Source of the DNA: Scyliorhinus canicula
Lineage: Eukaryota
Length of the DNA: 64,000 nucleotides
NCBI RefSeq assembly: GCF_902713615.1
Contig: NW_024055820.1
Coordinates: 1,045,220 to 1,109,219 of the forward strand
Direction: 5' to 3'
The notes beneath the pieces were generated by a model. It did no database searches and was not told the origin of the DNA. It saw only the letters and a program-made list of their open reading frames with translations. This document shows positions 3,114 through 62,140 of the stretch, piece by piece. Made by a program: the position numbers and the translations under genes. Every line of letters starts with the position of its first letter. The stretch's first letter is position 1.

Positions 3114-3186
3114 GCCCAGCTAGCTCAGTCGGTTGAGCATGGGAGTCTTAATCCCAGGGCCGTGGGTTCAAGACCCACATTGGTCG
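3114..3186 (+). tRNA. tRNA-Lys(CTT) pseudogene
   Basis: gcccagctagctcagtcggttgagcatgggagtcttaatcccagggccgtgggttcaagacccacattggtcg aligns over 73 nt to vertebrate tRNA-Lys-CTT. Acceptor-stem mismatches, altered anticodon loop and T-loop. Confidence 0.85.
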
Positions 3187-3230: not shown

Positions 3231-3780
3231 GGGCGGCACGGTAGCACAGTGGATAGCACTGCTGCATCACAGCACCAGGTCCCGGGATTCAATTCCCACT
3301 TGGGACACTGTGTGGAGTCTGCTTGTGACAATAATGAAGATTATTCTAAATGTATAAAATTCTGGGGGACCATGGTGGCACAGTGGTTGTGTGCCGACGT
3401 GCTGGGGACCCGGGTTCGATCCTAGCCCCGGGTCACAGTCTGTAAGGAGTTTGCACATTCTCCCATTGTCTGTGTGGGTTTCACCCCCACAACCCAAATA
3501 TGTGCAGGCTTGGCCAAATTAAATTGCCCCTTGATTGGACAAAAATATAAATCTGAAATTTTTTAAAATATAAATTTAGAGTAACCAATTAATTTTTTCC
3601 AATTAAGGGGCAATTTAGCCTGGCCAATCCACCTATCTTTGGGTGGTGGGGGCAAAACCCACACAAACACGGGGAGAATGTGCAAACTCCTCATGGACAG
3701 TTACCCACAGCCGGGATTGAACCTCAGTCCTCGGCACCGTGAGGCAGCAGGGCTAACCCACTGCACCACCGTGCTGCCCT
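3231..3780. mobile_element. Cluster of three HE1-like SINE copies (3231-3345+, 3364-3560+, 3560-3780-)
   Basis: Repeated gggcggcacggt/ggtcac..tgtg..gagtttgcacattc motifs; the last two are tail-to-tail. Confidence 0.7.
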
Positions 3781-4599: not shown

Positions 4600-4970
4600 G
4601 CAGATTCTCTCTTCTGGCTTCCGGTTCCTGGATGCCCGCGCACGCGCCGTGCTGCACATTTCCGCTGAGAAAGATGGCGGACGCGCAGGCGCCCTGCGGC
4701 ATATCGCCCCCCCCCCCCAAAACAGATGACAGCTGTTGACAGGGCCGATCTGAATAATAGCGGATATGTGCACCCAGAATGCCGGGCGCGGAGGAATACG
4801 CCCTATTTCCATCACAGGAACCAGAACGCGCAGGCGCCAGTATGCCCCACCCCCGAAAGTCTCCTATCTGTGCGGAGCAGGCGAGGTGCTGCTCGGGGCT
4901 GAGCGCAGCCGCAGTGAGTGTGGCTCCCGGAGGCTGAATGAGAGCCGCCGCGAGCGGGGACAATGGTGAG
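4600..4970. promoter_or_regulatory. CpG-island promoter/first exon, probably bidirectional
   Basis: CpG-rich; ETS-like cttccgg, NRF1-like gcgcacgcgc, YY1 aagatggcgg, donor-like gtgaga near 4966; paralog at 62420-62890. Confidence 0.65.
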
Positions 4971-5267
4971 AACCCAAACCCCCCAATAAGACCCATTGGT
5001 TTTATTGTCAGTCGGCAGACAGGAGCTGGAGAACTGAACCCAGGCAGAGGAGAGGGAGGGAGAAAACTGGGAGTGGAGGAAAGAAATGGTGCAGATGGTG
5101 AGATGGGTTTGGATTTCAGCCCAGGGAGGAGGGACAGTGTGTGGGACGGGAATTTACAGTTTTGGGGGAACAAGAGAGGAAATTTTTTTTCCAGAGAAAC
5201 TAGAATTGTCTGTTCATAATTTCTATCCTGGACTGACAGTGATGGCTTTTGTAAACTCCTTTTACAG

Positions 5268-5811
5268 GATATTAGAAGTGGAGAATTGGCCGACAGAAAA
5301 CCCAAACCAAACATCACATCGAAATCTGACAGTCACTCTTTTCATTAGGAGCTGAATATGATCAGTCTTTGAATTTGGAGTGAAAAATGTTTGTTCTGTT
5401 TCAGCAGTGTGACTGCAAAAGCACCCGAGTGTTCCAATGAACTAACTGTGGAGAGAGCTTTAACTAGTTACACATCCTCAAAAAAAGTATCACACCATTC
5501 ACTGCAGGGAGAAATTATACGCATGTTTTGTGTGTGGACAAGGTTTCAACCGGGAGAGACACTCTCACCATGGAGAAACCGTGGAAATGTGCAGACTGTG
5601 GGAGGGATTTAGTTACCCATCACAACTGGAAATTCATCGGCACAGTCACACTGGGGAGCGACCATTCAGCTGCTCCATTTGTGGGAAGGGATTCACTCTT
5701 CTGAAACGCCAGCGAGTTCACACTGAGGAGAGGCCATCCAACTGTTATGTCTGTGGAAAGAGATTTACTCAGTCATCCCACCTGCTAACACACCAGCGAG
5801 TTCACAAGTGA
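5268..5811 (+). pseudogene. C2H2 ZNF pseudogene (conserved leader plus ~3 fingers, frameshift and deletion)
   Basis: Acceptor ttttacag|gatattagaag; ATG 5570 MEKPWKC then frameshift; HTGERPF linkers; ends HQRVHK*. Confidence 0.85.
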
Positions 5812-10475: not shown

Positions 10476-10609
10476 GCCCCTTTTGCTGTTTCTCCTCTGG
10501 GCCCCATCTCCACTATTATTGTCTGATTGTCCCACTGAGACTCTCACTGTTATTATTGGACAATCAGCGAGTCAGCCTGAGCCTGTGGCCGCTCTCACCA
10601 TCTGGAACC

Positions 10610-11000
10610 GTCACAATGCCCGGGTGATTGACGGCAGCTCCGGACCAATAGGAAGAGGAGAGGCGGGTCTGGAGGATGACCGGGAGCGGCAGGTCCTCCA
10701 ACCAATCGGAGTGAATGAGGGGCGGGGCCCGCTGTGATTGGAGCATGCGCAGTGTGGGTAATGGCGAAGGAGAAGGGATGTGTCTTCAGATCGGAAATTC
10801 GTTCGGGGCGTTTAACAACATGGAGGGAGCGAGAGATGGCGGGGGTGGGCGGAAACGTTGTGTGAAGCTGTTGTGAGCTGCAATCCTCGGTAAAGCGTTT
10901 TCTGGACCCCGTTTGTACCGGGCGGAGCTGCAGCTCCTCATTTCGACTCGGTTTAACGACCGCCATCTTTATTGGATGTGCATCAGGGCGCATGCGCGTT
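10610..11000 (+). promoter_or_regulatory. CpG promoter of the ZNF gene at 12322
   Basis: gtgattgacggcag, two CCAAT, ggggcggggc, ggagcatgcgcagtg, YY1 cgccatcttt (10961), NRF1 gcgcatgcgc (10988-10997). Confidence 0.7.
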
Positions 11001-11464
11001 TCTCATCATTGTCGGGCGATGTTTCAATGAGTGGGAGGGGCTTGTTCCCCATTGTTCAGAATGGAGACAACTTGTCCATCAAACTGGATTAGTCTGAGCC
11101 CCAATGTCTTATTGATGATGCAAAGCGGTGGCAAAGATGGAAAGAAAAGGAAGCCAATCCTACTCTCCAGATTTCACTGTCTTATTAATCTTTCTCTCTC
11201 TCTTCCCCTCCCCATAGATCTACATTGTGCTTCAAAAAGAAAATCTCCCTTAATCCCCACACAGAAAAACAGATTTTATCAGAAAATGTCAAAAAACTAT
11301 ATAGAGGTTATCACTTCACCCATCCCACCCCACAGGAAACGTAGATCTTGCCCAATACAGATAACTGGACCCCAGTGAATGCTTTACAGTGAAGCCTCCT
11401 CCTACATTTGCCTCCTCTTCCAGATAGTGAAGGAACAGTGATATATCTCCAAGTCATGATGGTG

Positions 11465-11690: not shown

Positions 11691-12321
11691 GTGGGGCAGT
11701 ACGGTAGCATAGTGGTTAGCACAATTGCATCACAGCCCCTGGGTCCCAGGTTTGATTGTGTGTGAAGTTGGATCAAAGAAAAAAAGGTGTTTTGTGGAGA
11801 AGCAGAACTCTTGCCTCCTTTATTCTACAGCAACCCAGAAGCTCGAAGACAGAGGAAATAATGTTCTACAGGAACTAGAATTGTCCGTTCTGAATTTTTA
11901 TCCTGTACTAACAATGATGACTTTTGTAAATTGTTTTTAAAGGATATTGGAAAAGGAGGAATTATAGACAGAAATCTCAAAGATCACGTCTCGATGCGAC
12001 AAACTCACTCGATTTCTTCTGATCAGAATATTTTTGGGCTCTGAATATCATCGGTGAGAAGGAGAAATATTTGTCCGATCTGTCGGCTTCAAAATATTTT
12101 AAACGTGAGTGACTGGAAAAGCACCTGACCCACACAACACACACCCAAGTGAGAGTGTTCCAGTGAACTGACTGTGGAAAGAGCTTAAACCAGTTACACA
12201 GCCTGAAAAAACATCACACCATTCACAGTGAGGAGAGACAGTGCACATGTTGTGTGTGGAGGATACGGGGCAAGGCTTCCACTGATTGTCCAATCTGGAG
12301 ATTCACGAGGAGACCCAAAAC

Positions 12322-13272
12322 ATGGAGAAACCGTGGAAATGTGGGGACTGTGGAAAGGGATACGGATTTCCATCTGAGCTGGAGACTCATCGACGCATTC
12401 ACACTGGAGAGAGGCCGTTCACCTGCTCTCACTGTGAGAAGTGTTTCACTCGGTTATCCACCCTGCAGGCACACCAGCGAGTTCACACTGGGGAGAGACC
12501 ATTCACCTGTTCTCAGTGTGGGAAAGCATTCAGTGACTCAGCCACACTGCAGAGACACCAGCGAGTTCACACTGGGGACAAACCATTCACCTGCTCCCTC
12601 TGTGGGAATGGATTTGCACAGTTATCCACCCTCCAGACACATCAGCGAGTTCACACTGGGGAGAGGCCATTCACCTGCTCTCAGTGTGGGAAAGCATTCA
12701 GTGACTCAGCCACCCTGCAGAGACACCAGCGAGTTCACACTGGGGAGAAACCATTCACTTGCTCCCATTGTGGAAATGGATTCACACAGTTATCCACCCT
12801 GCTGTCACACCAGCGAGTTCACACCAGGGAGAGGCCATATACTTGTTCTCAGTGTGGGAAGGGATTCATTAATTCGTCCAACCTGCGGACACATCAGCGA
12901 GTTCACACTGGGGAGAAACCATTTAACTGCTCCCTCTGTGGGAATGGATTCACGCAGTTATCCAGCCTGCAGAAACACCAGCGAGTTCACACTGGGGAGA
13001 GGCCATTCACCTGCTCTCAGTGTGGGAAGGGATTCAGTAATCCGTCAAACCTGCAGACACACCAGCGAGTTCACTCTGGGGAGAGGCCGTTCACCTGCTC
13101 TCAGTGTGGGAAGGGATTTGTTAATTCGTCCAACCTGCTGAAACACGAGCGAGTTCATACTGGGGAGAAACCATTTATCTGTTCCCTCTGTGGGAATGGA
13201 TTCTCACAGTTATCCAGTCTGCAGACACACCAGCGAGTTCACACTGGGGCGAGGTCATTCACCTGCTCTTAG
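12322..13272 (+). CDS. Tandem C2H2 zinc-finger protein, 11 fingers (type A, starts MEKPWKC), 3'-truncated
   Basis: 11 CxxC-x12-HxxxH with TGE(R/K)PF linkers. TAG replaces CAG in finger 12, just before a CR1 insertion. Acceptor near 11942. Confidence 0.85.
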
Positions 13273-20949: not shown

Positions 20950-23900
20950 GTCTTACAAGAACAAAGTAAATTCCAGGAACAGGCCCTTTGGCCCTCCAAG
21001 CCTACACTGACCATGCTGCCCGTCTGAACTAAAAGCCCCTACCCTTCCGGGAACCATATCTCTCTATTCCCATCCTATTCATGTATTTGTCAAGACGTCA
21101 TTATCATAACTGCTTCCACCACCTCCCCCAGCAGCGAGTTCCAGGCTCCCACCACCCTCTGTTCAAAATGCTGGCCTCGTACATTTCCTTTAAACTTTGC
21201 TCCTTAAACCTATGCCCCCTCGTAATTGACCCTTGCACCCAAGGAAAAAGCTTCTGTCCACTCTGTCCATGCCCCGTATAATCTTGTAGACTTCTATCAG
21301 GTCGCCCCTCAACCTCCGTCATTATCCAACCTATCCTGATAGCTAATGCCTTCCATACCAGGCAACATCCTGGTAAATCCTGTCTGTACTGTCTCCAAAG
21401 CCTCCACAAACATCTTTGATTTGATTTATTGTCACATGTACCAAAGTACAGTGAAAAGTATTTTTCTGCGGCCAAGGGAATGTACACAGTACGTATATAG
21501 TAGACAAAAAAAGAATAATCGACAGAGTACATTGACAAATGGTACATTGACAAACAGTGATTGGTTACAGTATGGAACAAGGGCCAAACAGCAACACATG
21601 CGCAAGAACAGTATAGGATGTCATGAATAGTGTTCTTACAGGGAACAGATCAGTCCAAGGAAGAGTCATTGAGGAGGCTGTGGGGAAAATGTTGTTCCTC
21701 TATGTGGATGTGCGGGTCTTCAGATTTCATATCTTCTGCCTGATGGAAGGGTCTGGAAGAAGGCAATGCCTGGGTGGGAGGGCTCTCTGATAATGCTGTC
21801 TGCCTTCCTGAGGCAGAGGGAGGTGTAGACAGAATCAATGTGTAAATGGCAAGCTTCTGTGATGCGTTGGGCTGAGTTCACCACAGCGCAGTTTATTGCT
21901 ATCTTGGGCCGAGCAGTTGCCATACCAAGCTGTGATGCAGCCGGATAGTGGCACATCTGGAGAAGTGGGTGAGAATCGATGCAGACAAGCCAAATTTCTT
22001 TAGCTTCCGTAGGAAGTAGAGACGTTGCTGGGCTTTCTTGGCTGTTGCATGAAAGTTAGTGGACCAGGACAGACTGTTGGTGATGGTGACTCTCAGGAAC
22101 TTAAAGCTCTGGTAATGTGGCGACCAGAATTGAACAAGATATTCCAAGTGAAGCCTAACTAAGGTTCTAGAAAGGTGCAACATGACTTGCCAATTTTTAA
22201 AGGCATGGCCCCGGCCATTGAAGGCAAGTGCGCCATATGCCTTTTTAAAATAAATTTAGATTACCCAATTATTTTGGGTCATCAGGGGCTGGTTTAGCTC
22301 ACTTGGCTAAATCGCTGGCTTTTAAAGCACACCAAGCAGGCCAGCAGCACGGTTCGATTCCCGTACCAGCCTCCCCGAACAGGCGCCGGAATGTGGCGAC
22401 AAGGGGCTTTTCACAGTAACTTCATTGAAGCCTACTCGTGACAATAAGCGATTTTCATTTTTTTTTTCATTTTTCCAATTAAGGGGCAATTTAGTGTGGC
22501 CAATCCACCTACTCTGCACATTTTTGGGTTGTGGGGGCGAAACCCACGCAGACACGGGGAGAATGTGCAAACTCCACACGGACAGTGACCCAGAGCCGGG
22601 ATCGAACCTGGGACCTCAGCGCCGTGAGGCGGTTGTGCTAACCACTAGGCCACCGTGCTGCCCCGCCATATGCCTTCTTGACTACCTTCTCGACGTGCAT
22701 TGCCACTTTCAGTGAAGTGTGCACCTGTACACACACATCCCTCTGCCTATCAATACTCTTAAGGGTTCTGCCATTTACTGTATATTTCCCACCTGTATTC
22801 GACCTTCCAAAATGCATTCCCTCACATTTTCATAGAATTTACAGTGCAGAAGGAGGCCATTCGGCCCATCGAGTCTGCACCGGCTCTTGGAAAGAGCACC
22901 CTACCCAAGGTCAACACCTCCACCCTATCCCCATAACCCAGTAACCCCACCCAACACTAAGGGCAATTTTGGATACTAAGGGCAATTTATCATGGCCAAT
23001 CCACCTAATTTGTCTGTAATAAACTCCACCTACCATTTCTCCGCCCAAGTCTCCAGCTACTGTATCGTCTGACAGTCCTCATCGCTTTCCGCAATTCCAC
23101 CAACCTTTGTGTCGTCTGCAAACTTGCCAATCAAATCAGTTATTTTCTTCCAAATCAATTGTACATATTACAAACAGCAATGGTCCCAGCACTGATCCCT
23201 GAGAAACATCACTAGTCACAGTACTCCATTCAGAAACACACCCTTCCACTGTCCTCTGTCTTCTATAACGGAGCCATTTCTGTATCCATTGTGTCAACTT
23301 CACCTTCTGAACCAGTCTGCCATGAGGCCTTGTAAAAGGCCGTACTGAAGTCCATGCAGACAACATCCACTGCCCTACCCTCATCAATCATCTTCGTCAC
23401 TTCCTCGAATACCGCGATCATGTTAGTGAGACACAACCTCCCCTTCACAAAACCATGTTCCCACTCACCAATACGTCCATTTATTTCCAAGTGGGAGTAA
23501 ATTGTGTCTCGATGAATCCTCTCCAAATATTTCCCCATCAGTGATGTAAGGCTCACCGGCCTGTAATTACATGGATTATCCTTGCTACCCTTCTTAAACA
23601 AAGGAACAACATTGGCTATTCTCCAATCCTCTGGATCCCATCAGGCCATGGGCACTTCATGTTTTTAAGACCCCTAGTACATCCTCCTTTTTGATCTCCA
23701 CATGACCCAAACTATTTACACACATTTCTCCAAACTCATTATCTACCAAATCCTTCTCTTTGGTGAATACAAACAAAGTACTCATTTAATACCTTGTCCA
23801 TTTCCTCTGGCTCCATGCGAGATTTCCTCCCCTGTCCTGGAGTGGGTCAACCCCCTCCCTGGCTACCCCATTGGTCTTTATATATGTGTAAAAAGACTCG

Positions 23901-26722: not shown

Positions 26723-27655
26723 CCATAAGTCATAGGAGCAGAATTAGGCCACTCGGCCCATTGACCTGCTCTGTCATTCAATCATGGCTGATATTTTTCT
26801 CATCCCCATTCTTCTGCCTTTTCTCCATAACCCCTGATCCCCTTATTGATCAAAAACCTAACTATCTCTGTCTTAAACACACTCAGTGAATTGGCCTCCA
26901 CAGCCTTCTGCAGCAAAGAGTTCCACAGATTCACCCCCCTCTGGCTGAGGAAATTCCTCCTCATCTCTGTCTTAAAGGATCATCCCTTTCGTCTGAGATT
27001 GTTGTCTCTGCTTCTAGTTTTTCCTACAAGTGGAAACATCCTCTACACATCCATTCTATCCAGGCCTCGCAGTATCCTATAAGCTTCAAGAAGATCCCCC
27101 CTCATCCTTCTAAACTATGAGTACAGACCCAGAGTCCTCAATCATTCCTCATAGGACAAGCTCTTCATTCCAGGGATCATTGTTGTAAACCTCCTCTGGA
27201 CCCTTTCCAAGGCCAGCAATCCTTGGATACAGGGCACAATACTCCAAATGGGGTTTGACCAGAGTCGTATACAGCCTCAGTACATCCCTGCTCTTGCATT
27301 CTAGCCCTCTCGACATGAATGCTACCATTGCATTTGCCTCCCTAACTGCCGACTGAACCTGCACGTTAACCTTAAGAGAATCGTGAACAAGGACTCCCAA
27401 GTCCCTTTGTGCTTCTAATTTCCTAAGCATTTCCCCATTTCGAAAATAGTCTATGCCTCTATACCTCCTTCCAAAAGGCATAACCTCACACTTTTCCACA
27501 TTGTATTCCATCTCGTATTCCCTCTATACCTGCTTCCAAAGGGCATAACCTCACACTTTTCCACGTTGTATTCCATCTCGTATTCCCTCTATACCTGCTT
27601 CCAAAGGGCATAACCTCACACTTTTCCACGTTGTATTCCATCTCGTATTCCCTCT
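26723..27655 (-). mobile_element. CR1 LINE 3' portion
   Basis: MEYNVEKCEVM, QRDLGVLVH, LVKPHLEYC; tail cataagtcataggagc. Confidence 0.85.
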
Positions 27656-29971: not shown

Positions 29972-30214
29972 CTTCCAAACACCCTTTCACTCTGTGCTCC
30001 TTGTGCAATTTGAAGCCAGGTATTAGCGACAAGGCTCAAAGAGCATCAGCCCACTGGAGGCAAAGTGGTGAGACCGGCCAGTCCAGCAGAAAGAAACCCT
30101 CCGACCATCCCCACTGACCACCTGTCAGAATGAACAAAATGCAGTCCTGGGTGTAGAGCAGAAACAATAACAGCAGAATCCAACCCCTGTAATAGATTGT
30201 GAAATTGTTGGGTG

Positions 30215-30976
30215 TCACAGCAGGTGAGATGAAACAGGCAATCCCGTCTCACATTGAGATGTGGACGGCGTCTCCCCAGTGCGAATTCGCTGGTGTCTCC
30301 GCAGGTTTGATATGTGACTAAATCCTTTCCCACACTGAGAGCAGATGAACGGCCTCTCCCCAGTATGAACTCGCTGGTGTGTCCGCAGGTGATATGACTG
30401 AGTGAATCCCTTCCCACACTGAGGGCAGGTGAATGGCTTCTTCCCAGTGTGAACTCGCTGATGTTTCCGCAGGTGGGATAACTGACTGAATCCCTCCCCA
30501 CACTGAGAGCAGGTGAACAATTTCTCCCCAGTGTGAACTCGCTGGTGTTTCCGTAGTTTGGATCCTTCAGTAAATCTTTTCCCACACTGAGAGCAGGTGA
30601 ATGGTCTCTCCCCAGTGTGAATTCGCTGGTGCGACTGCAGGTTGGATCCTTGAGCAAATCCTTTCCCACACTGGGAGCAGGTGAATGGCCTCTCCCCAGT
30701 GTGAACTCGCTGGTGTTTCCGCAGGTTAGATACTTGAGCAAATCCTTTCCCACATTGAGAGCAGGTGAATGGCCTCTCCCCAGTGTGAATTCGCTGGTGT
30801 GACTGTAGGTTGGATCCTTGAGCAAATCCTTTCCCACATTGAGAGCAGGTGAATGGCCTCACCCCAGTGTGAATCCGTTGATGAATCTCCAGCTGTGATG
30901 GGGTTCTGAATCCCTTCCCACAGTGCCCACATTTCCACCGTTTCTCCATGTTTTGGGTCTCCTCCGGACTCTCCAT
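30215..30976 (-). CDS. Tandem C2H2 zinc-finger protein, 7 intact plus 2 degenerate fingers (type A)
   Basis: [16 protein letters not shown]...; fingers 2 and 4 identical; acceptor ttttacag near 31293; TGA in the decayed last finger. Confidence 0.85.
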   Translation of the reverse strand: MESPEETQNMEKRWKCGHCGKGFRTPSQLEIHQRIHTGVRPFTCSQCGKGFAQGSNLQSHQRIHTGERPFTCSQCGKGFAQVSNLRKHQRVHTGERPFTCSQCGKGFAQGSNLQSHQRIHTGERPFTCSQCGKRFTEGSKLRKHQRVHTGEKLFTCSQCGEGFSQLSHLRKHQRVHTGKKPFTCPQCGKGFTQSYHLRTHQRVHTGERPFICSQCGKGFSHISNLRRHQRIRTGETPSTSQCETGLPVSSHLL

Positions 30977-31661
30977 GTTGGACACCAGTTCAGAACACAG
31001 GTATGGTCTCTTCCACTGTGAATGTTATTATGTTTATTCAGGCCGTGTAACTGATTAAACCTCTTTCCACAGTCAGTTCACTGGAACACACTCACTCGGG
31101 TGTGTGTTGTGTGGGTCTCGCTGCTTTTCTAGTCACACTGATGTTTGAAACCTTTAGCTGACAGTTCAGGCAAACATTTCTTCTTCTAGATTCAAAGCCC
31201 GATGGTATTCAGATTAAAGGGAATCGAGTGACTGTCAGATCGAGACGTGACGTTTGAGATTTCTGTCTGTAATTCCTCCTCGTCTAATATCCTGTAAAAA
31301 CAATTTACAAAACTCATCACTGTCGGTGCAGGATAGAAACTCAGAACAGACAATTCTAGTTTCTATATCAGATTTTTTACTCCCTCTCATTCCCTGAAAG
31401 CTGTAAATCTCCATCCCACACTCTCCCCCTCCATTCTCACTCTGCTGTATCTAATATTCACCCTCCCAATTCTCCTGAAGGTGCTGATTCAGGCTGATTG
31501 ACAGATCCGTGCTCACAGCTTCCTTCCAGGAGGTCACAACAAATATGAGCAGCAGTCGGCCATTCAGCCCATCAAGCCTGAATCATTCAATGGGATCATT
31601 GGCCAATCTACCTCAGCTCCGTTTTCCCACACTATCCCCATATCCCTTGACACCCTCAATA

Positions 31662-35980: not shown

Positions 35981-36283
35981 ATCTGTTTGTTCAATCCATC
36001 CATCTCCCTTGATTCTATAACCATTAATACTCTCATCTCACAAACTTCTATCAATCTCAGTTTTTATACTTTCTGTAGACTGAATCTGACAGAATTGCAG
36101 ATTTCACTATATTTTCTGTGAAGTGATTTCTGACATTGCTCCTGAACAGCCAGTCTCAGTTAAACGAATAAATATCACTGATTTGGACGTTTAAATGGTG
36201 ACAATTATTTTACTCTTAATTGGTTATGTAACAAAATTTCAAAAACAGAATAATTTGAGTTAAACCCTGCGGAAGTTGGAAAC

Positions 36284-36515
36284 GTGAAGTGAAAACAGAA
36301 AGTTGTGGAAATGTGAAGTGAAAACAGAAAGTTGTGGAAATGTGAAGTGAAAACAGAAAGTTGTGGAAATGTGAAGTGAAAACAGAAAGTTGTGGAAATG
36401 TGAAGTGAAAACAGAAAGTTGTGGAAATGTGAAGTGAAAACAGAAAGTTGTGGAAATGTGAAGTGAAAACAGAAAGTTGTGGAAATGTGAAGTGAAAACA
36501 GAAAGTTGTGGAAAT
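36284..36515. repeat. Perfect 29-bp minisatellite x8
   Basis: gtgaagtgaaaacagaaagttgtggaaat; 232 bp = 8 x 29; runs into a Penelope-like end (36516-36595). Confidence 0.95.
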
Positions 36516-36739: not shown

Positions 36740-37285
36740 CCGGATAGAAAATCCCGCCATAAGATGGCGACGGCCGCCAGGTGACCCAAAAACCCGTCAG
36801 AGGGAAGCCCCGCCCACCCTCTCTAACTATACAAACATGGCCGCCCCAACGCTCCGCGCCAGGAACAAAAGACCCGACCTCCATTCCCAAGATGGCGTTG
36901 GTCGCCGGGTGACCCGGGAGCGGTTACCGGAGCGGAAACCCCGCCTACTTTCTCTTCCCATACCAAAATGGCCGTTCCATCACTCTGCTCCACAAAAGAC
37001 CAGAGTTCCATTCCCAAGATGGTGGCGGTCACCGGTTGCCTGTCACCCGGCAGGAAGATCCGCCACTCTCTCATCCCTAACCAAGATGGCCGCCGCACCG
37101 CTCCGCAGCAATGACAAAAGACGCGTCTTCCTTTCCCAAGAGGGCGTCCGGTTGCCGTAGAAAATCAACACCCCGAACTACCGTCTTTCTATTGGTCGGC
37201 ACTTGCCGTCAATCACTCCCCAGCCATTGTGAGCTGGAGCATGCGCAGTGCAGGTATGAAGCTGGACTCAGGCGGGTGAGTGGAG
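36740..37285. promoter_or_regulatory. Bidirectional CpG promoter between the 30976(-) and 37863(+) ZNF genes, with YY1 motif array
   Basis: Six to seven AA(G)ATGGC-type motifs; leftward CCAAT/TGATTGACGG at ~37190-37217; rightward ggagcatgcgcagtg and donor gtgagt at 37276. Confidence 0.7.
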
Positions 37286-37862
37286 ACCCCAAACCCCCCA
37301 ATAAGACCCTTTGGTTTTATTGTCAGTCTGCAGACAGGAGCTGGAGAACTGAACCCAGGCAGAGGAGAGGGAGGGAGAAAACTGGGAGTGGAGGAAAGAG
37401 ATGGTGAGATGGGTTTGGATTTCAGCCCAGGGAGGAGGGAGAGTGTGTGGGACGGGGATTTACAGCTTTGGGGGAACAAGAGAGGGAAAAATGTTCCAGA
37501 GAAACTAGAATTGTCTGTTCAGAATTTCTATCCTGGACTGACAGTGATGGCTTTTGTAAACTCCTTTACAGGGATATTAGAAGCAGAGGATTGGCTGACA
37601 GAAAACTCAAACCAAACATCACATTGGGATCTGACAGAGTCACTCAATTCTTTCGAACCTGAATATCACAGTCTTTGAATGTGGAAGGAGTAATGTTTGT
37701 CTGTTCAGTTTGTGGGAAAAGATTTTAAACATCAGTGTGATTGGAAAAGCACCGAGACGCACATACACAGTAAGTGTTCCATGAACTGACCGTGGAAAGA
37801 GCTTTAACCAGTTACATAGTCAGCAAAACCATCACACCATTCACAGTGGGGAGAAACCGTCC

Positions 37863-38912
37863 ATGTGTTCTGTGTGTGGACGAGAGTTCAACTTGTCATT
37901 CAACCTGGAGAGACTCAAGGACACCGGCACCATGGAGAAACCGTGGAAATGTGGGGACTGTTGGAAGGGATTCAGTTACCCTTCTGAACTGGAAATACAT
38001 CGACGCAGTCACACTGGGGAGAGGCCATTCACCTGCTCCACCTGTGGGAAGGGATTCACTCAGTCATCCAGTCTGCTGACACACCAGTATATTCACACAG
38101 AACAGACACCTTTCAAATGTTCTGAATGTGAGAAGAGATTTAAAAGCAAAAAGTATCTGTTGAGACACCAACGCATTCACAGTGAGGACAAGCCATTCAC
38201 CTGCTCCTTGTGTGGAAAGGGATTCACTGCTACATCAAACCTGCAGAAACACCAGCGAGTTCACACTGATAAAAGACCTTTTAAATGTCCAGACTGTGGG
38301 AAGTGCTTTAAAACTTCCGGGGAAGTGACCTGTCATCAACGTGTTCACACTGACGAGAGACCATTCAGGTGTTCTCACTGCGGGACTGGCTTCAGGCGAT
38401 CATCTGAACTTACTGTACATCAGCGAATTCACACTGGAGAGAGACCGTTTACTTGCTCTGTGTGTGGGAAGGGATTTATTCAGTCTTATCACCTACTGAA
38501 ACACCAACAAATTCACTCTGATATGAAACCTTTTAAATGTTTTGACTGTGAGCAGAGCTTTAGAAGCAGCAATGGTCTAGTGATGCATCAACGAATTCAC
38601 ACTGGGGAGAGACCGTTTACTTGCTCCGTGTGTGGGAAGGGCTTCACTCAGTCATACAACCTGCTGAAACACCAACAAATTCACTCTGATATAAAACCTT
38701 TTAAATGTTTTGCCTGTGAGCAGAGCTTTAAAAGCAGCAATGGGCTGATGATACACCAGCGAGTTCACGCTGGAGAGAGATTGTTCACCTGCCCCAAGTG
38801 TGGGAATGGATTCACTGACTTACAGCTTGTGCTGAAACACCAGCGACTTCATGAGCATCTGTCGGGATTGGATTTAGCTGTTTTTGCTGCTGTCAATCAG
38901 ATCCAGGACTGA
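37863..38912 (+). CDS. Tandem C2H2 zinc-finger protein, 11 fingers (type A; alternative ATG at 37932)
   Basis: 11 intact fingers; acceptor cctttacag at 37571; C-terminal extension EHLSGLDLAVFAAVNQIQD. Confidence 0.9.
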   Translation: MCSVCGREFNLSFNLERLKDTGTMEKPWKCGDCWKGFSYPSELEIHRRSHTGERPFTCSTCGKGFTQSSSLLTHQYIHTEQTPFKCSECEKRFKSKKYLLRHQRIHSEDKPFTCSLCGKGFTATSNLQKHQRVHTDKRPFKCPDCGKCFKTSGEVTCHQRVHTDERPFRCSHCGTGFRRSSELTVHQRIHTGERPFTCSVCGKGFIQSYHLLKHQQIHSDMKPFKCFDCEQSFRSSNGLVMHQRIHTGERPFTCSVCGKGFTQSYNLLKHQQIHSDIKPFKCFACEQSFKSSNGLMIHQRVHAGERLFTCPKCGNGFTDLQLVLKHQRLHEHLSGLDLAVFAAVNQIQD

Positions 38913-48361: not shown

Positions 48362-49055
48362 TTAGAACAAAGCACCTGAATAGGCCCTCCAGCCCTCCAA
48401 GCCTGTACTGGTCATTATACCAACCTTTGCCAAAGCCCTCAGCAGTTCCTTGTGCCGTATCCCTCTATACCCATCCTATCCATGTGCTTGTCAAGATGCC
48501 TTTTGAACGCCGTTAATGTATCTGCTTCCACAACCTCCCCTGGCAACGTGTTCCAGGCGCTCACCACACTGCGTAAAAAAACTGCCTCGCGCATCTCCTC
48601 TCAACTTTGCCCAGTGGAACTTAAACCTATGCCCCCTGCTCACTGACCCCTCCACCCTGGGAATGAGTGCCTGCCCATCCATTCTATCCGTGCCCCTCAT
48701 AAACTTGTAGACCTCTATCAGGCCGCCCCTCAACCTCTGTCTTTCTAATGAAAACTGTCCGAGTCTATTCAGCCTCTCCACATAGCTAACACCCTCCAGA
48801 CCAGGCAACATCCTGGTAAACCTCCTCTGCACCCTCTCCAAAGCGTCCACATCCTGCTGGTAATGTGGCGACCAGAATTGTGCATAATATTCCAAGTGCG
48901 GCATTACCAAGGTTCTATCCAACTGTAGCATGACTTGCCAGTTTTTATACTCAATGCCCCATCCGATGAAGGAAAGCATTCCGTGTGCTTTTTTGACTAC
49001 CTTGTCCACTTGTGTTGCTACCTTCAAAGACCTGTGGACATGCACGCCCAGATCG
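48362..49055 (-). mobile_element. CR1 LINE 3' portion
   Basis: QVDKVVKKAHGML, PHLEYYAQFWSPH, LERVQRRFTRMLPG, SRGHRFK. Confidence 0.88.
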
Positions 49056-50079
49056 CTGTAGGTTGTAGGTTCCTTTCACCGAAGGTCATTAGATAAACAG
49101 TTGGGTTTTTACAACAGATTTAAGAGTCACTTTTTCCTAGTGCTGGCCCACCTTGGCCTCGCCCCAGTGTGTGTGTGCTGGTGTGTCAGCTACCTGCTGA
49201 GACACCTGTTCACATGTGACTGCAGAGGTTAGTTCTGCTGTCATTACTGCTATCTGGGGCACTCTCCATTCTCCACTCATTCCTATTTTCTGGTCTTTCT
49301 GGTGAATGGTAAAGGTCAGTGAACTTGGTTTCTGCATAAATTAGTTCCAAACTGTACTGGCCCTCCAAAATCCGGCTTCCATGCCAACATAGCAAATAAA
49401 ATCAACTGCAAAGGTATTTTTTTCAAAAATGTAAAATTAATCACCCAGCACGCAACTCAAAATAATGATCCTGAGATTAAAGCCTCATTATCTACCCATT
49501 CAGCTACATGGTGAGAAAACTCCCTCCACAAACGCTAATCTCACTATATCCAGCCTAAGGAACTGGACGCACATCAAGTCTCATTGAAATTTCAGTCCTG
49601 TCACAGTTGGGATTTGGGAAAATTATCATAGAATCAGAATTTACAGTGTAGAAGGAGACCATTTGGCCCATTAAGTCTGCACCAGCCCTTGTAAGGAGCA
49701 CCCCACTTGAGCACACGCTGTCGATGAATTATGTTTATTTCTGTACCTTACAGTGCGACACTGAAATGCTTCGGAGGAATTTTGATTACGTTGCCACTTG
49801 GTTCCGGGCAACATTCAGACATGTTAAATGTTGAATTTTAACATTGGAATGCCGGAGGGAAATGCTTATATTTCACGTTCCAATGCAGTATGTGAGACCA
49901 CAGAGCTTTTGTTAGATTTAAACTCCCGGACCACAAAGGCTTTAAGAATAGTTGGACATATGTGGGCTAAGTACATATGCACAATTGCTTTCCAATCTGG
50001 TGTCGGGATTACAGTGAACAATTGTTAACTGATTGCATCTTTCAATGGTGGGTAATGTACCCAGCATTCCCGGTGTCCG

Positions 50080-50430: not shown

Positions 50431-50706
50431 GGAGAGAAAATGATTGTATCGCTGATTTTGTTCTCACTCTGCCCAGAACTGCATCCAGGCAGAGGGGAGG
50501 AAGGGGGGAAAATTTTGGAGTTGAGGAAATAAATGGTGAGATGGGTTTGAATTCAGCCCAGGGAGGAGAGAATGTGTGCGGGATAGGGATTTACAACTTT
50601 TGGGAAAAAAAGACAGGAAAAATATTCCATAGAAACTAGACTTGTCTTTTCTGTGTTTCTGTGCTCTACACTTGATGTGAAACGTTTTGTAATCTGCTTT
50701 TCCAGG

Positions 50707-51620
50707 CTATTCGAAGGGGGAGATAACTGAAGAGGACAGGAAGGAACATCATTGCAAGATCTGACAAGATTTATCCAGATCTGAATATTTTTTTAAGGAA
50801 GAAGGATCTGAATAACATTGGCCTTTGAATGTGGAAGGAGAAACATTTGGTTGTTCTGTCCGTGGGAGAAGATTTCAAACACCAGTGTTCTTGGAAAATA
50901 ACCGACACACGTACACCTGAGGGAGAGTGTTCCAGTGAACTGACTGTGGAAAGAGCTTTAACCAGTTCACAGTCTATAAAAAATCACACCATTCACAGTG
51001 AAGAGAAACTGTAAATGTGATCTCTGTGATAATACTTAAATTGATCATCTAACCTGCAAAGACAGGAAGATACAGGCACCATGGAGAAACCGTGGAAATG
51101 TGACGACTGTGGGAAGGGATACAATTATCCATCCCGGCTGGAATACCACTGACGCACTCACACTGGGGAGAAGCTGTGGAACTGTGGGGATTGTGGTAAA
51201 CGATTGAATTCTCAATACCAGCTGGCAAACCATCAACGTAATCACACTGGGGAGAGGCCATTCACCTGTTCTCTGTGTGTGAAGGGATTTACCCAGTCAG
51301 CCTGTCTCATGTCACACCAGCGATTTCACACGGAGGAGAGGCCCTTCAGCTGCACCGACTGTGGAAAGAAGTTCAGGCATTCATCCCACCTCAGTAAACA
51401 CCAACGTGTTCACACAGGAGAGACTGTTCACCTGCTCAGTATGTGGGAAGGGATTCACTCAGTCAGCCAACCTGGTGGTACACAAGCAAATTCATACTGG
51501 GGAGAGGCCATTTAGCTGCACTTCCTGTGGAAAGAGGTTAAAGTCGTCATCTGAACTAACTGCACATCAGCGGGTTCACACAGGGGAGAAACCATTCACT
51601 TGCTCTGTGTGTGGGAATCC
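50707..51620 (+). pseudogene. C2H2 ZNF pseudogene (type A): stop in finger 1, frameshift, truncated by a LINE
   Basis: ATG 51081 MEKPWKC; TGA 51150-51152 (paralogs have CGA); frameshift near 51420; ~6 fingers; Rex1 begins inside finger 7. Confidence 0.88.
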
Positions 51621-52557
51621 CTGTACACACACGGCTGTGTGGCAAAATTTGGCTCCAAATCTATCTACAAGTTTGCTGATGACACGACCATAGTGGGTCG
51701 GATTTTGAATAACGATGAATCAAAGTATAGGAGGGAGAAAGAGAACCTCGAGGAGTGGTGTAACAACATAATCTATCCCTCAATGTCACCAAAACTGAGG
51801 AGCTGGTTATTGACTTCAGGAAGCAAAGTATTGTACACACCCCTGTCTGCATCAATGGTGCCCAGGTGGAAATCGTTGACAGCTTCAAATTCCTAGGTGT
51901 GCACATCACCAACAATCTGTCCTGGTTCAACTACGTCAATGCTATGACCAACAAAGCACAACAGCGCCTACATTTTCTCAGGAAACTAAGGAATTTTGGC
52001 ATGCCCACATTGACTCTCACCAATTTTTATAAATGCACCTTCAAAAGCATCCTATCTGGCTGCATCACAGCCTGGTATGGCAACTGCTTGTCCCAAGTCA
52101 GTAAGAAACTACTGAGAGATGTGAGCACAGCCCAGTTCATCGCGTGAACTGCCTCCCATTCATTGATTCTGTCAACACCTCCCGCTGCCTTGGGAAGATG
52201 GGCAGCAGAATTAAAGATCCCTCCCACCCGGGTAGTTCTCTCTTCCAATCTCTTGCATCGAGCAGGAGATACAAAAGTCTAAGAACGCGAACCAACAGAT
52301 TCAAAAACAGTTTCTTACCCGCTGTTACCAAATTCCTGAACGACCCTCTTATGAACTGAACTGATCTCTTCACGCATCTTCTCTGCTGAGTAGTACTGCA
52401 CTCTGTATGCTTCACCCGATGTCTATGTCTGTGTATTTACTTTCTGTATTTATCGTATCTGCTACGTTTTTCATGTGTGGAATGAACTATCTGGACTGTA
52501 CGGAGAACAATACTTTTCATTGTACCTCGGTACACATGACACTAAATCCAAATCCAA
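51620..52557 (+). mobile_element. Rex1/Babar-type LINE, 5'-truncated, followed by (TA)n
   Basis: [36 protein letters not shown]. Confidence 0.88.
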
Positions 52558-53914: not shown

Positions 53915-55120
53915 TTACTTGTGGCCTCGTTGGTGTTTCAGCAGGTTGGATGAAATGGTGAATCCCTTCCCACACTTGGAGCAGATAAACGGTCTCTCCC
54001 CAGTGTGAACTCGCTGATGTACAGTGAGGCTAAATGACTGCGTGAATTCCTTCCCACATTGGTCGCAGGCGAATGGCCTCTCCCCAGTGTGAATTCGCTG
54101 GTGCTTCTGCAGGCCGGATGACCGAGTGAATCCCTTCCCACACTTGGAACAAATGAATGGTCTCTCCCCAGTGTGAATTCGCTGGTGCCTCTGCAACACA
54201 GATAACTGAGTGAATCCCTTCCCACATTGGGCGCAGGTGAATGGCCTCTCCCCTGTGTGAACTCGCTGATGTACAGCGAGGGCAGATGATTGTCTGAACC
54301 CAGTGCCGCAGTGAGAGCACCTAAACGGTTTCTCGTCAGTTTGAACACACTGATGGCGAATCAGTTCCCCAGAACGTTTATAGCACATCCCGCAGTCTGG
54401 ACATTGAAATGGTCTCTCCCCAGTGTGAATTCGCTGATGTACAGCGAGGTTAGATGATCGTCTGAACCCAGTCCCGCAGTGAGAGCACCTGAACGGTTTC
54501 TCGTCGGTGTGAACACACTGATGGCGCATGAGTTCCCCGGAACTTTTGTAGCACTTCCCACAGTCTGGACATTGAAATGGTCTCTCATCAGTGTGAACTC
54601 GCTGGTGACTCAGCAGGTGGGATAACTGAGTGAATCTCTTCCCACACTTGGCGCAGGTGAATGGTCTCTCTCCAGTGTGAACTCGCTGATGTACAGTGAG
54701 GTGAGATGATTGTCTGAACCCAGTCCCGCAGTGAGAGCACCTGAACGGTTTCACGTCAGTGTGAACACGTTGATGGCACATCAGATCCCCAGAACGTTTG
54801 TAGCACTTCCCGCAGTCTGGACATTGAAACGGTCTCTCCACAGTGTGAACTCGCTGGTGTCTCAGCAGGTCAGATGACTGAGTGAATCCCTTCCCACACT
54901 TGGAGCAGGTGAATGGTCTCTCCCCAGTGTGAATGCGCCGATGAGTTTCCAGCTGGGATGGGTAAGTGAATCCTTTCCCACAGTCCACACATTTCCACGG
55001 TGTCTCCTCAGTGTGACTGCATTTGTGGCTTGTGAGGCCTGATGATCCGGTGAATCCTTGTCCACACACACAACACGTGTATGGTTTCTCCCCACTGTGA
55101 ACGATGCTTTTTCCTTCCAT
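53915..55120 (-). CDS. Tandem C2H2 zinc-finger protein, 14 fingers (one lacks the last His) (type B, starts MEGKSIVHS)
   Basis: 14 finger repeats, ends HQRGHK*; acceptor tttcacag near 55229. Confidence 0.92.
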
Positions 55121-55524
55121 GTTCAAAGTACGATGATATTCAGGATATGATCAATTGAGGACTCTGTCAGATCCTGATGTGATGCTTGGTTTGAGTTTTC
55201 GGACTTTGAAGCCTCCCCTTCGAACACCCTGTGAAACTGATTGAAAACAGAAAATAGGGAGCGAGAGAGAACCCACAAAAACACAAAGGCAGGTTGTGAA
55301 ATTTAGCTGAATGAATCTGGTCATTTGTGGGGCCGGCTCTGGGAAAAAGTGACCATGAAAACGGCTGGATTGTCACAAAAACCCAACTGGCCTCTTTGGG
55401 AGGAGAAAGAATGAGGTGAAGAGGGATGTTGTATATCAACAAGACATATTAAGAGAGTAGATGGCAAAGCAAATTCGATCTTGAGCTTCATAAACAGTAA
55501 TATTGATACTGAAACTATGCTTCT

Positions 55525-61354: not shown

Positions 61355-62140
61355 GCTTGTGAACTCGCAGGTGTGTTAGCAATTAGGATGAGTGAGTCAA
61401 CCCCTTTTCACGGACATTACAGGTGAATAGCCTCTCCCCAGTGTGAATTTGATGGTGTTTCAGAAGATAAGATAAATGAGAAAATTCCTTCCCAGAGACG
61501 GAGTAGGTAAAGGGCCTCTCCCCACTGTGAACTCTCTGGTGTGCCAGCTGGTTGGGTGGCTGACTGAATTCCTTCCCACACACAGAGCAGGTGAATGGCC
61601 TCTCCCTAGTGTGAACTTTCTGGTGTGTCAGCAGGTTGGATGAATGAGTGAATCCCTTCCCACATACTGAGCAAGTTAATGGCCTCACTGTGAACCTGCT
61701 GATGTGTCAGAAGGTTGTATGAACATGTGAATCCCTTCCCACATTCAGAGCAGGTGAACGGTCTATCCCCTGTATGAAGTTGCCGGTGTATCAGAAGTTT
61801 GGATGAATTAATGAATCCTTTCCCACAGTCAGAGCAGTTAAATGGCCTCTCCCCAGTGTGAATTCTCTGGTGGTTCAGTAGGGCAGATGGACGGTTGAAT
61901 CCTTTGCCACACACCGAGCAGGTGAATGGCCTCTCCCCAGTGTGAGCATATTGGTGTGTTAATAAATTCTTTTTGTTTTTAAAGCTCTTCTCAGAGTCAG
62001 GTCAGTTAAAAGGTTTGTTATCAGAATGAACAAGTTGATGTGTCTGCAGGTGGGATGACTGAATGAATCCTTTCCCACACAGGGAGCAGGAGAACGGTCT
62101 CTCCCCAGTGTGAATACGTTGATGTGTCAGCAGATCCTTT
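61355..62140 (-). pseudogene. C2H2 ZNF pseudogene, ~9 fingers, leader and start deleted
   Basis: Intron joins directly to DLLTHQRIH; TGA at 62002; frameshift near 61685; TAA at 61383. Confidence 0.88.

What the first reader, a model, noticed from the sequence alone, without database searches (positions are those of the whole stretch)
11942..12321. Conserved leader made of three fossil zinc fingers with shared TGA codons, one exactly at a Zn-ligand Cys
Seen: between the acceptor and the MEKPWKC start, type A copies read approximately FVCSVCGKRF.TSV*LEKHRD.H / VFQ*TDCGKSFNQLHSLKKHHTIH / ..C.VC..GFN*.SNLE.H. The TGA replacing the first Cys of fossil finger 2 is in all five copies (5438, 12164, 31078-31080 minus, 37782, 50936). 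The finger 1 TGA is in most copies and the finger 3 TGA in two. Inference: most simply one ancestral inactivation copied by duplication. Retention of ~350 nt in every paralog could instead reflect a function such as translational control or an RNA/DNA element. Sec or readthrough at the Cys-position UGA is a long shot, because the copies here also carry frameshifts and I see no clear SECIS.
Basis: partly seen in the sequence, partly recalled or inferred. Interest (0 to 1): 0.7.

Follow-up and report, generated by a model that had tools for sequence, protein, structure and literature searches.

The report
Dead zinc fingers as gene leader
The stretch in front of this shark zinc-finger gene is the decayed remains of its own first three fingers, and the shared TGA stop codons are inherited scars, not recoded codons, so the finding is real but ordinary.

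Summary
Window 11943-12321 lies between a conserved 3' splice-site-like sequence and the ATG at 12322. It reads as three decayed C2H2 fingers. All five stated coordinates hold TGA at the first-Cys position of fossil finger 2.

- The ATG replaces the G of a former TGEKP linker.
- Two paralogs (type B) still translate fossil finger 3 as a real finger. They have lost about 151 nt that held fingers 1-2 and both TGAs. Another copy lacks the leader altogether.

Selenocysteine or readthrough is rejected.
- In the three intact genes no in-frame AUG leads to the TGA.
- Other stops and frameshifts flank it.
- No SECIS appears anywhere in 64 kb, even at E<=10.
- No stable or covarying hairpin follows it.
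- TGA is the commonest one-step stop in finger DNA.

The leader as a whole gathers indels and is no better kept than the neighbouring intron. One loose end remains: about 100 nt around fossil finger 2 is modestly better conserved, for unknown reasons.

The scan has noted this same leader family several times on other pieces of this catshark genome.

The parts
11851..11942 (+). Conserved intron 3' end: branch-point-like TACTAAC (11906-11912), pyrimidine tract and AG. Homology among paralogs begins here.
   Evidence: alignable in 7 copies, with the AG kept in all. Use as a splice site is inferred; no RNA was seen.
11943..12067 (+). Pre-finger spacer of the leader, the former N-terminal coding sequence (D-I-R/G-... 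frame from the first exon base).
   Evidence: shared by type A and type B copies. A 5-nt indel splits c12k/c31k from the rest.
12068..12133 (+). Fossil finger 1: both Cys are now Ser in c12k, with TAA at 12100 and TGA at 12110.
12155..12226 (+). Fossil finger 2 with TGA (12164-12166) at the first zinc-ligand Cys. It is the core of the best-conserved ~100-nt block (about 12140-12235).
12245..12318 (+). Fossil finger 3: an 8-nt insertion, TGA at 12283, and a 12-codon uORF from 12247.
   Evidence: homologous to the translated first finger of the type B genes.
12322..13272 (+). Live coding sequence: ATG in a strong context (A at -3, G at +4) at the G position of an old TGEKP linker; 316 aa, 11 C2H2 fingers, TAG stop.
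30950..31291 (-). Paralogous leader c31k; TGA at 31080-31078. An in-frame AUG at 30976 probably starts the protein 9 codons earlier.
37573..37931 (+). Paralogous leader c37k; TGA at 37782. The frame is open from 37785 into the coding sequence, and the second Cys of fossil finger 2 is now Arg.
5268..5569 (+). Paralogous leader c5k; TGA at 5438. This copy is also frameshifted in its first real finger and truncated, so it is a pseudogene.
50717..51080 (+). Paralogous leader c51k; TGA at 50936. Its coding sequence is broken by a stop at codon 24 plus frameshifts, so it is a pseudogene.
55121..55228 (-). Type B leader (c55k): the same acceptor and spacer, but ~151 nt (finger 1 and most of finger 2) are absent. 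The ATG at 55120 lets fossil finger 3 be translated as finger 1 of 13.
62002..62136 (-). c62k: the acceptor is joined directly to mid-finger sequence with no leader. There is an independent TGA at a first-Cys position (62004-62002).

Best explanation
The leader is a relic. The ancestral gene of this paralog family read from an upstream start, through a short spacer, into a longer finger array. This step is inferred: the start was probably an ATG at the end of a small upstream exon, in phase with the first base of this exon. The first three fingers were then knocked out, by TGY-to-TGA at Cys 1 of finger 2 among other hits. A new start codon arose at the G position of the TGEKP linker before finger 4. 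That truncated form was copied many times. The TGA codons are inherited scars lying in what is now 5' untranslated sequence. They are not decoded. Scanning ribosomes pass a few weak, non-conserved upstream AUGs and start at the strong-context ATG (12322). Shown here: the anatomy, the homology to a live finger, the shared and unshared lesions, and the absence of recoding signals. Inferred: splice-site use, the old start codon, and the scanning behaviour.
For: All five TGAs at Cys 1 of fossil finger 2 were verified. Other lesions are only partly shared: f1 TGA 4/5, f1 TAA 2/5, f3 TGA 2/5, plus copy-specific frameshifts. This is the pattern of continuing decay after one old hit. Fossil finger 3 aligns with the translated finger 1 of the type B genes, which lack ~151 nt holding fingers 1-2 and both TGAs. 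c62k lacks the whole leader. The ATG and its context are nearly invariant, and ATG occupies the linker G position. The coding sequences downstream are alive: dN/dS 0.26-0.47 with no indels, and 11, 11 and 13 Pfam C2H2 fingers in c12k, c37k and c55k. A sawshark protein starts at the same MEKPWKC. In the three intact genes no in-frame AUG lies between the previous stop and the TGA. No SECIS was found in 64 kb at the gathering score or at E<=10. The block after the TGA folds worse than shuffles (z=+1.8), with 0 compensatory pairs. TGA makes up 43% of one-step nonsense paths in the finger coding DNA of this window (57% when transitions and CpG are weighted), and Cys-to-TGA alone is 18%. c62k shows a second, independent Cys 1 TGA. 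Leader pairs are 67-82% identical with 32-95 gapped columns. For c37k the adjacent intron is better kept than the leader against every paralog: 91.5 vs 78% (c5k), 77.6 vs 72% (c51k), 80.6 vs 74% (c31k), 80 vs 73% (c12k).
Against: Run shares were about 0.6 for both an exon-rich and an intron-rich query, which says nothing about splicing. The leader's raw divergence (0.18-0.27) is below pS of the coding sequence (0.29-0.43), so weak constraint is not excluded. About 100 nt around fossil finger 2 has 63% invariant ungapped columns against 41% in the rest of the leader (p=0.001, window chosen post hoc; p=0.01 without CpG columns). That block also shows a weak codon-phase pattern of variable sites, 9/3/11 (p=0.03). 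The neutral yardstick is imperfect because the region upstream of c37k, c5k and c62k looks homogenised.
Confidence: 0.85

Rival explanations
1. The ~100-nt block around fossil finger 2 (about 12140-12235), which holds the invariant TGA, is a nucleotide-level cis-regulatory element (RNA or DNA) of type A genes. The TGA is kept only because it lies inside that block.
For: The block is as well conserved as the start-codon region: mean pair identity 81-84% against 63-71% in the flanks, with few indels. It has 63% invariant columns against 41%. An earlier follow-up on another cluster of this genome reported the same (s1-195939).
Against: The window was chosen post hoc and there are only five copies. 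The two decayed pseudogene copies keep the block as well as the intact genes do: intact-intact pairs 78-89%, pairs that include a decayed copy 76-93%. Type B genes with 13 and 7 intact fingers lack it. There is no structure and no covariation, and no Rfam match.
Confidence: 0.15
2. The UGA at the Cys position is decoded, as selenocysteine or by programmed readthrough, giving a longer protein with a Sec or other residue as zinc ligand.
For: The UGA aligns exactly with a Cys ligand and is in all five copies. In c37k the frame is open from the UGA into the main ORF.
Against: No in-frame AUG is upstream in c12k, c31k or c37k. In c12k and c31k the finger 2 frame is out of frame with the main ORF. 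The second Cys is Arg in c37k, and c5k and c51k carry extra stops and frameshifts. No SECIS was found at E<=10. The context is UGA-A, not UGA-CUAG, and no hairpin follows.
Confidence: 0.01
3. The leader acts as a translational attenuator. The old start codon (an ATG at the end of an upstream exon) and the leader AUGs open short uORFs, so the main ORF depends on leaky scanning or reinitiation.
For: ATG|GTGAGA donor-like sites lie 159-181 nt upstream of the acceptor in c5k, c37k, c51k and c62k, in phase with the exon's first codon. There are 1-4 uAUGs per leader, mostly in weak context, against a strong main AUG.
Against: The uAUGs and uORF lengths are not conserved between copies, and the peptide frame is broken by a 5-nt indel in c12k/c31k. 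No such upstream exon was found for c12k. No RNA or ribosome data are available. An earlier follow-up judged the uORF neutral.
Confidence: 0.15
4. The type A units are dead pseudogenes throughout, and the stops simply mark dead genes.
For: Two of the five copies (c5k, c51k) are also broken in the array.
Against: c12k, c31k and c37k keep 244-326-aa ORFs with 7-11 intact fingers, dN/dS 0.26-0.47 and no indels. Their ATG context is conserved. A sawshark protein model starts with the same residues.
Confidence: 0.04

Closest known systems
Degenerate or decayed fingers at the N-terminal edge of tandem C2H2 arrays (spacer remnants in KRAB-ZNF and other poly-ZNF genes)
   Same: Finger units at the array edge lose ligands, pick up stops and frameshifts, and persist as recognisable remnants. 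[quoted passage not shown] That spacer regions hold finger remnants is my own recollection of Looman et al. 2002 and was not checked here.
   Different: Here the remnants are not in a coding spacer but upstream of a new start codon born in a linker. The gene has no KRAB or other effector domain by Pfam. The truncated form founded a whole paralog family.
Selenoprotein genes (UGA-Sec with a 3' UTR SECIS, Cys homologues at the UGA)
   Same: A UGA aligned with a Cys position.
   Different: There is no initiated ORF across the UGA, no SECIS, and the frame is not intact on both sides.
Programmed stop-codon readthrough (UGA-CUAG type or structure-stimulated)
   Same: A conserved UGA with well-conserved sequence downstream.
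   Different: The context is UGA-ACU. No stable or covarying structure follows. The downstream frame is not the main ORF frame in c12k and c31k.
uORF-bearing long 5' leaders
   Same: A leader of 340-380 nt in the three intact genes, with short upstream ORFs.
   Different: The uAUGs are not conserved in position or length among the paralogs.

Membership tests
C2H2 zinc finger (as a fossil) | C-x2-C-x12-H-x3-H spacing with F/L core and a TGEKP-like linker | tested here: met
   Fossil finger 2 keeps every consensus position except Cys 1, which is TGA. c37k finger 1 keeps all positions but carries two stops. Pfam gives no hit on the 39-aa piece after the TGA, which lacks Cys 1.
C2H2 zinc finger (as a fossil) | Homology to a finger that is translated in a relative | tested here: met
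   Fossil finger 3 aligns with finger 1 of the type B genes c55k and c43k.
Selenoprotein gene | UGA inside an ORF opened by a start codon and intact on both sides | tested here: not met
   No in-frame AUG after the previous stop in c12k, c31k or c37k; further stops and frameshifts are present.
Selenoprotein gene | SECIS element in the 3' UTR | tested here: not met
   No SECIS family match in the whole window on either strand, at the gathering score or at E<=10. The extent of the 3' UTR is unknown.
Programmed readthrough | Favourable stop context (UGA-CUAG) or a downstream stimulatory structure | tested here: not met
   Context is UGA-ACU-GAC. MFE -13.5 kcal/mol against a shuffle mean of -19.0, z=+1.8; 0 compensatory pairs.
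Programmed readthrough | Protein-level constraint on the extension | tested here: inconclusive
   Pseudo pN/pS is 0.4-0.6 on 22 codons and the phase pattern is 9/3/11 (p=0.03). But Cys to Arg occurs at a ligand, and c5k and c51k carry stops and frameshifts.
Conserved regulatory uORF | uAUG and uORF conserved in position among paralogs | tested here: not met
   The finger 1 uAUG is present in 3 of 5 copies with lengths 3, 11 and 17 codons. The other uAUGs are each present in only one to four of the five copies.
5' untranslated exon sequence | Present in mature mRNA downstream of a used acceptor | not testable with these tools
Run shares were uninformative.

The most novel reading that the evidence does not exclude
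The ~100-nt core of fossil finger 2, including its invariant UGA, is a family-wide cis-regulatory element of an old, effector-less shark zinc-finger gene family. It would have been co-opted from dead coding sequence to control transcription or translation of the paralogs.
Probability: 0.12. Interest if true: 0.5.

Novelty: new member of a known kind. Interest (0 to 1): 0.18.

Why it matters
The result mainly closes a tempting but wrong lead: a stop codon at a zinc-ligand cysteine, shared by all paralogs, is not selenocysteine or readthrough. It also gives a tidy example of how a tandem finger array erodes from its N-terminal end and re-roots its start codon in a linker. The window holds intermediate stages side by side (type B, type A, c62k). 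The family seems old, because a sawshark protein starts at the same residues. For genome annotation, the lesson is to start these genes at the linker-born ATG and not to read through the leader. The only open point of possible functional interest is the modestly over-conserved block around fossil finger 2.

Tried and rejected
- **The look-up of sequencing runs**: the same runs hold about 0.6 of the sampled words for both an exon-rich and an intron-rich query. They behave like DNA or unspliced RNA and say nothing about splicing.
- **Exact-protein look-ups** of seven candidate products from five of the window's genes found nothing. Searches used an end coordinate one codon short; one search repeated them correctly.
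- **The search for homologous proteins:**
  - On the fossil part of the c37k ORF it found nothing.
  - On the c12k protein it was swamped by unrelated poly-ZNF proteins.
  - The only informative hits were a sawshark and a stingray protein.
  - The sawshark locus was not on record, and the stingray locus could not be fetched because the file was too large. No cross-species leader DNA was therefore compared.
- **Considered and rejected:**
  - An acceptor at TTCCAG|TGA: the AG is lost in c37k and c5k.
  - A donor in the fossil linker: the implied 15-nt intron is too short.
  - A hairpin after the TGA: not supported.
- **Literature searches** for degenerate fingers gave only generic support.

Full report
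**What the window is.** The 64-kb window is a cluster of paralogous poly-C2H2 zinc-finger genes among SINE and LINE debris. Earlier notes of this scan place it in a catshark.
- A six-frame scan finds three intact arrays on the type A plan: c12k (+, ATG 12322, 11 fingers), c31k (-, 7 fingers) and c37k (+, 11 fingers).
- Two type A copies are decayed: c5k and c51k.
- Two type B genes lie on the minus strand: c55k (13 fingers) and c43k (7 fingers).
- One rearranged copy, c62k, is also present.
- Pfam sees only C2H2 fingers and no effector domain.

**Observation.** The region 11943-12321 does read as three decayed fingers.
- TGA at 12164-12166 is followed by a finger that matches the C2H2 consensus everywhere except the first Cys.
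- The four other stated coordinates also hold TGA at that position.
A finger 1 TAA is in two copies, with CAA in two others.
- The ATG lies where the G of a TGEKP linker used to be...H-x3-(H)-T-M-E-K-P-W-K-C.

**Homology limits and gene anatomy.**
- Paralog homology starts sharply about 90 nt upstream of 11943. It takes in a TACTAAC/CTGAC branch-point-like motif, a pyrimidine tract and an AG kept in all seven alignable copies. It ends about 20 nt after the stop codon. A 3' splice site at 11942/11943 is therefore a reasonable inference, but no RNA was seen.
- In c37k the frame that opens at the first exon base is the frame of fossil finger 1. In c62k the same phase runs straight into the array.
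- c5k, c37k, c51k and c62k carry a donor-like ATG|GTGAGA 159-181 nt upstream of the acceptor.
- The likeliest history, which is inferred, is this. An old start codon at the end of a small upstream exon was followed by a short spacer and then by a longer array, whose first three fingers later died.

**Intermediate stages.**
- Type B genes share the acceptor and spacer with type A. They lack about 151 nt covering finger 1 and most of finger 2, including both TGAs.
- They start at an ATG just before the deletion and translate what is fossil finger 3 in type A as their first real finger.
- c62k lacks the whole leader. It shows a second, independent TGA at a first-Cys position (62004-62002).
- So the leader is not retained in every paralog, and a TGA at Cys 1 has arisen in at least two different fingers of this window.

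**Are the TGAs special?**
- In the intact finger coding sequences of this window, TGA accounts for 285 of 658 one-step nonsense paths. The share is 57% when transitions and CpG are weighted. Cys codons alone give 117 of those paths.
- In the c12k leader 12 of 15 stop triplets over all frames are TGA.
- The aligned triplets at the finger 3 site (CGG in c5k, TGA in c12k and c51k) suggest a CGA-to-TGA CpG hit. c51k's stop at coding codon 24 aligns with CGA in c12k in the same way.

**Recoding.**
- In c12k, c31k and c37k no AUG lies in frame between the preceding stop and the finger 2 TGA. No AUG-initiated ribosome reaches it in frame.
- In c12k and c31k that frame is not the frame of the main ORF.
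- The second Cys is Arg in c37k. c5k and c51k carry further stops and frameshifts inside the finger.
- Rfam finds no SECIS in the window on either strand, at the gathering score or at E<=10.
- The 101 nt around and after the TGA fold less well than shuffled sequence (z=+1.8). The five-copy consensus has no compensatory pair.
- The context is UGA-A. Selenocysteine and programmed readthrough are rejected.

**Is the leader constrained?**
- Pairwise identity over the leader is 67-82%, with 32-95 gapped columns of about 400. The coding sequence just downstream has none.
- For c37k the adjacent intron is better kept than the leader against every paralog: 91.5 vs 78% (c5k), 77.6 vs 72% (c51k), 80.6 vs 74% (c31k) and 80 vs 73% (c12k).
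- The arrays are under purifying selection: dN/dS 0.26-0.47 and pS 0.29-0.43.
- Leader p-distances (0.18-0.27) equal those of the last 92 intron bases (0.19-0.23). They are below pS, so weak constraint cannot be excluded. NG86 pS is inflated by transition bias and by uncertain finger orthology.
- The yardstick is imperfect. The roughly 290 nt upstream of the acceptor in c37k, c5k and c62k are 91-100% identical and look homogenised.

**The loose end.**
- A block of about 100 nt (roughly 12140-12235: the end of finger 1 through finger 2) is the best-kept part of the unit apart from the start-codon region.
- It has 63% invariant ungapped columns against 41% in the rest of the leader (p=0.001, window chosen after looking). 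Without CpG columns the figures are 66% and 48% (p=0.01).
- Variable sites in fossil finger 2 fall 9/3/11 by old codon phase (p=0.03). Pseudo pN/pS is 0.4-0.6 on 22 codons. The numbers are small and may be noise.
- Against a function: the two pseudogene copies keep the block as well as the intact genes do, type B genes lack it, and it has no structure.
- An earlier follow-up on another cluster reported a similar block. That is a lead, not independent proof.

**Start codon and age.**
- The main ATG has A or G at -3 and G at +4 in all copies. Upstream AUGs are mostly in weak context and differ between copies.
- c31k and c37k each have an in-frame upstream AUG that may add 9 or 23 residues.
- A sawshark protein model starts with the same [14 protein letters not shown] and aligns colinearly at 60% identity.
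- A stingray model has a ligand-less finger directly before REKRWEC.
- This suggests that the eroded architecture predates the split of these lineages. No orthologous DNA could be fetched.

**Limits.**
- Run shares were uninformative.
- By oversight the whole-window Rfam scan included those 40 bases. Nothing there was used.
- All comparisons rest on five type A copies in one window.

**Verdict.** The exotic reading is excluded as far as sequence can show. The feature is an ordinary evolutionary relic, already noted repeatedly by this scan elsewhere in the same genome.

Noticed in passing
window 4963-4965, 5095-5097, 37401-37403, 50533-50535, 62298-62296 (minus), 62430-62428 (minus): Donor-like ATG|GTGAGA sites in CpG-rich sequence upstream of c5k, c37k, c51k and c62k. 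The nearer ones lie 159-181 nt before the acceptor, and the ATG is in phase with the first codon of the finger exon. They are possibly the old start codon on a small upstream exon. No RNA check was made.
   Followed up: partly
window 37283-37560 vs 4968-5295 and 62425-62140: The ~290 nt upstream of the acceptor are 91-93% identical overall among c37k, c5k and c62k, and 100% in parts between c37k and c5k. The leaders and arrays of the same copies are only about 70-80% alike. This mosaic history suggests gene conversion or a recent partial duplication of the promoter-proximal part.
   Followed up: partly
window 12167-13138 (+) and 30049-30858 (-): Long stop-free alternative reading frames (324 and 270 aa) run through the finger arrays out of frame with the real protein. 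This is probably a by-product of the repeat unit lacking stops in that frame.
   Followed up: no
window 10482-11185 vs 58205-57502 (88%), 2038-1790 (95%), 46968-46809: A CpG-rich repeated element lies 0.8-3.4 kb upstream of c12k, c55k and c43k. It could be a transposon or a shared promoter module; this was not resolved.
   Followed up: no
window 36277-36515: A tandem repeat of 58-nt units, 98-99% identical, upstream of the c37k CpG island.
   Followed up: no
window 3114-3186 and 3459-3676: A tRNA gene (Rfam, 44 bits). Nearby is a ~200-nt hairpin-like inverted repeat that gives sub-threshold matches to unrelated plant miRNA families. It is probably a foldback repeat. tRNA-derived SINE fragments are frequent across the window.
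   Followed up: no
window 51150-51152: c51k's coding sequence is cut at codon 24 by a TGA where c12k has CGA, a CpG-type hit. This is the same kind of change proposed for the finger 3 TGA (and, less securely, the finger 1 TGA) of the leader.
   Followed up: partly
window 23266-23640, 27152-27523, 48494-49075, 51764-52144: Open frames that look by eye like reverse-transcriptase fragments of LINE-type retrotransposons, lying between the zinc-finger genes. They were not searched.
   Followed up: no
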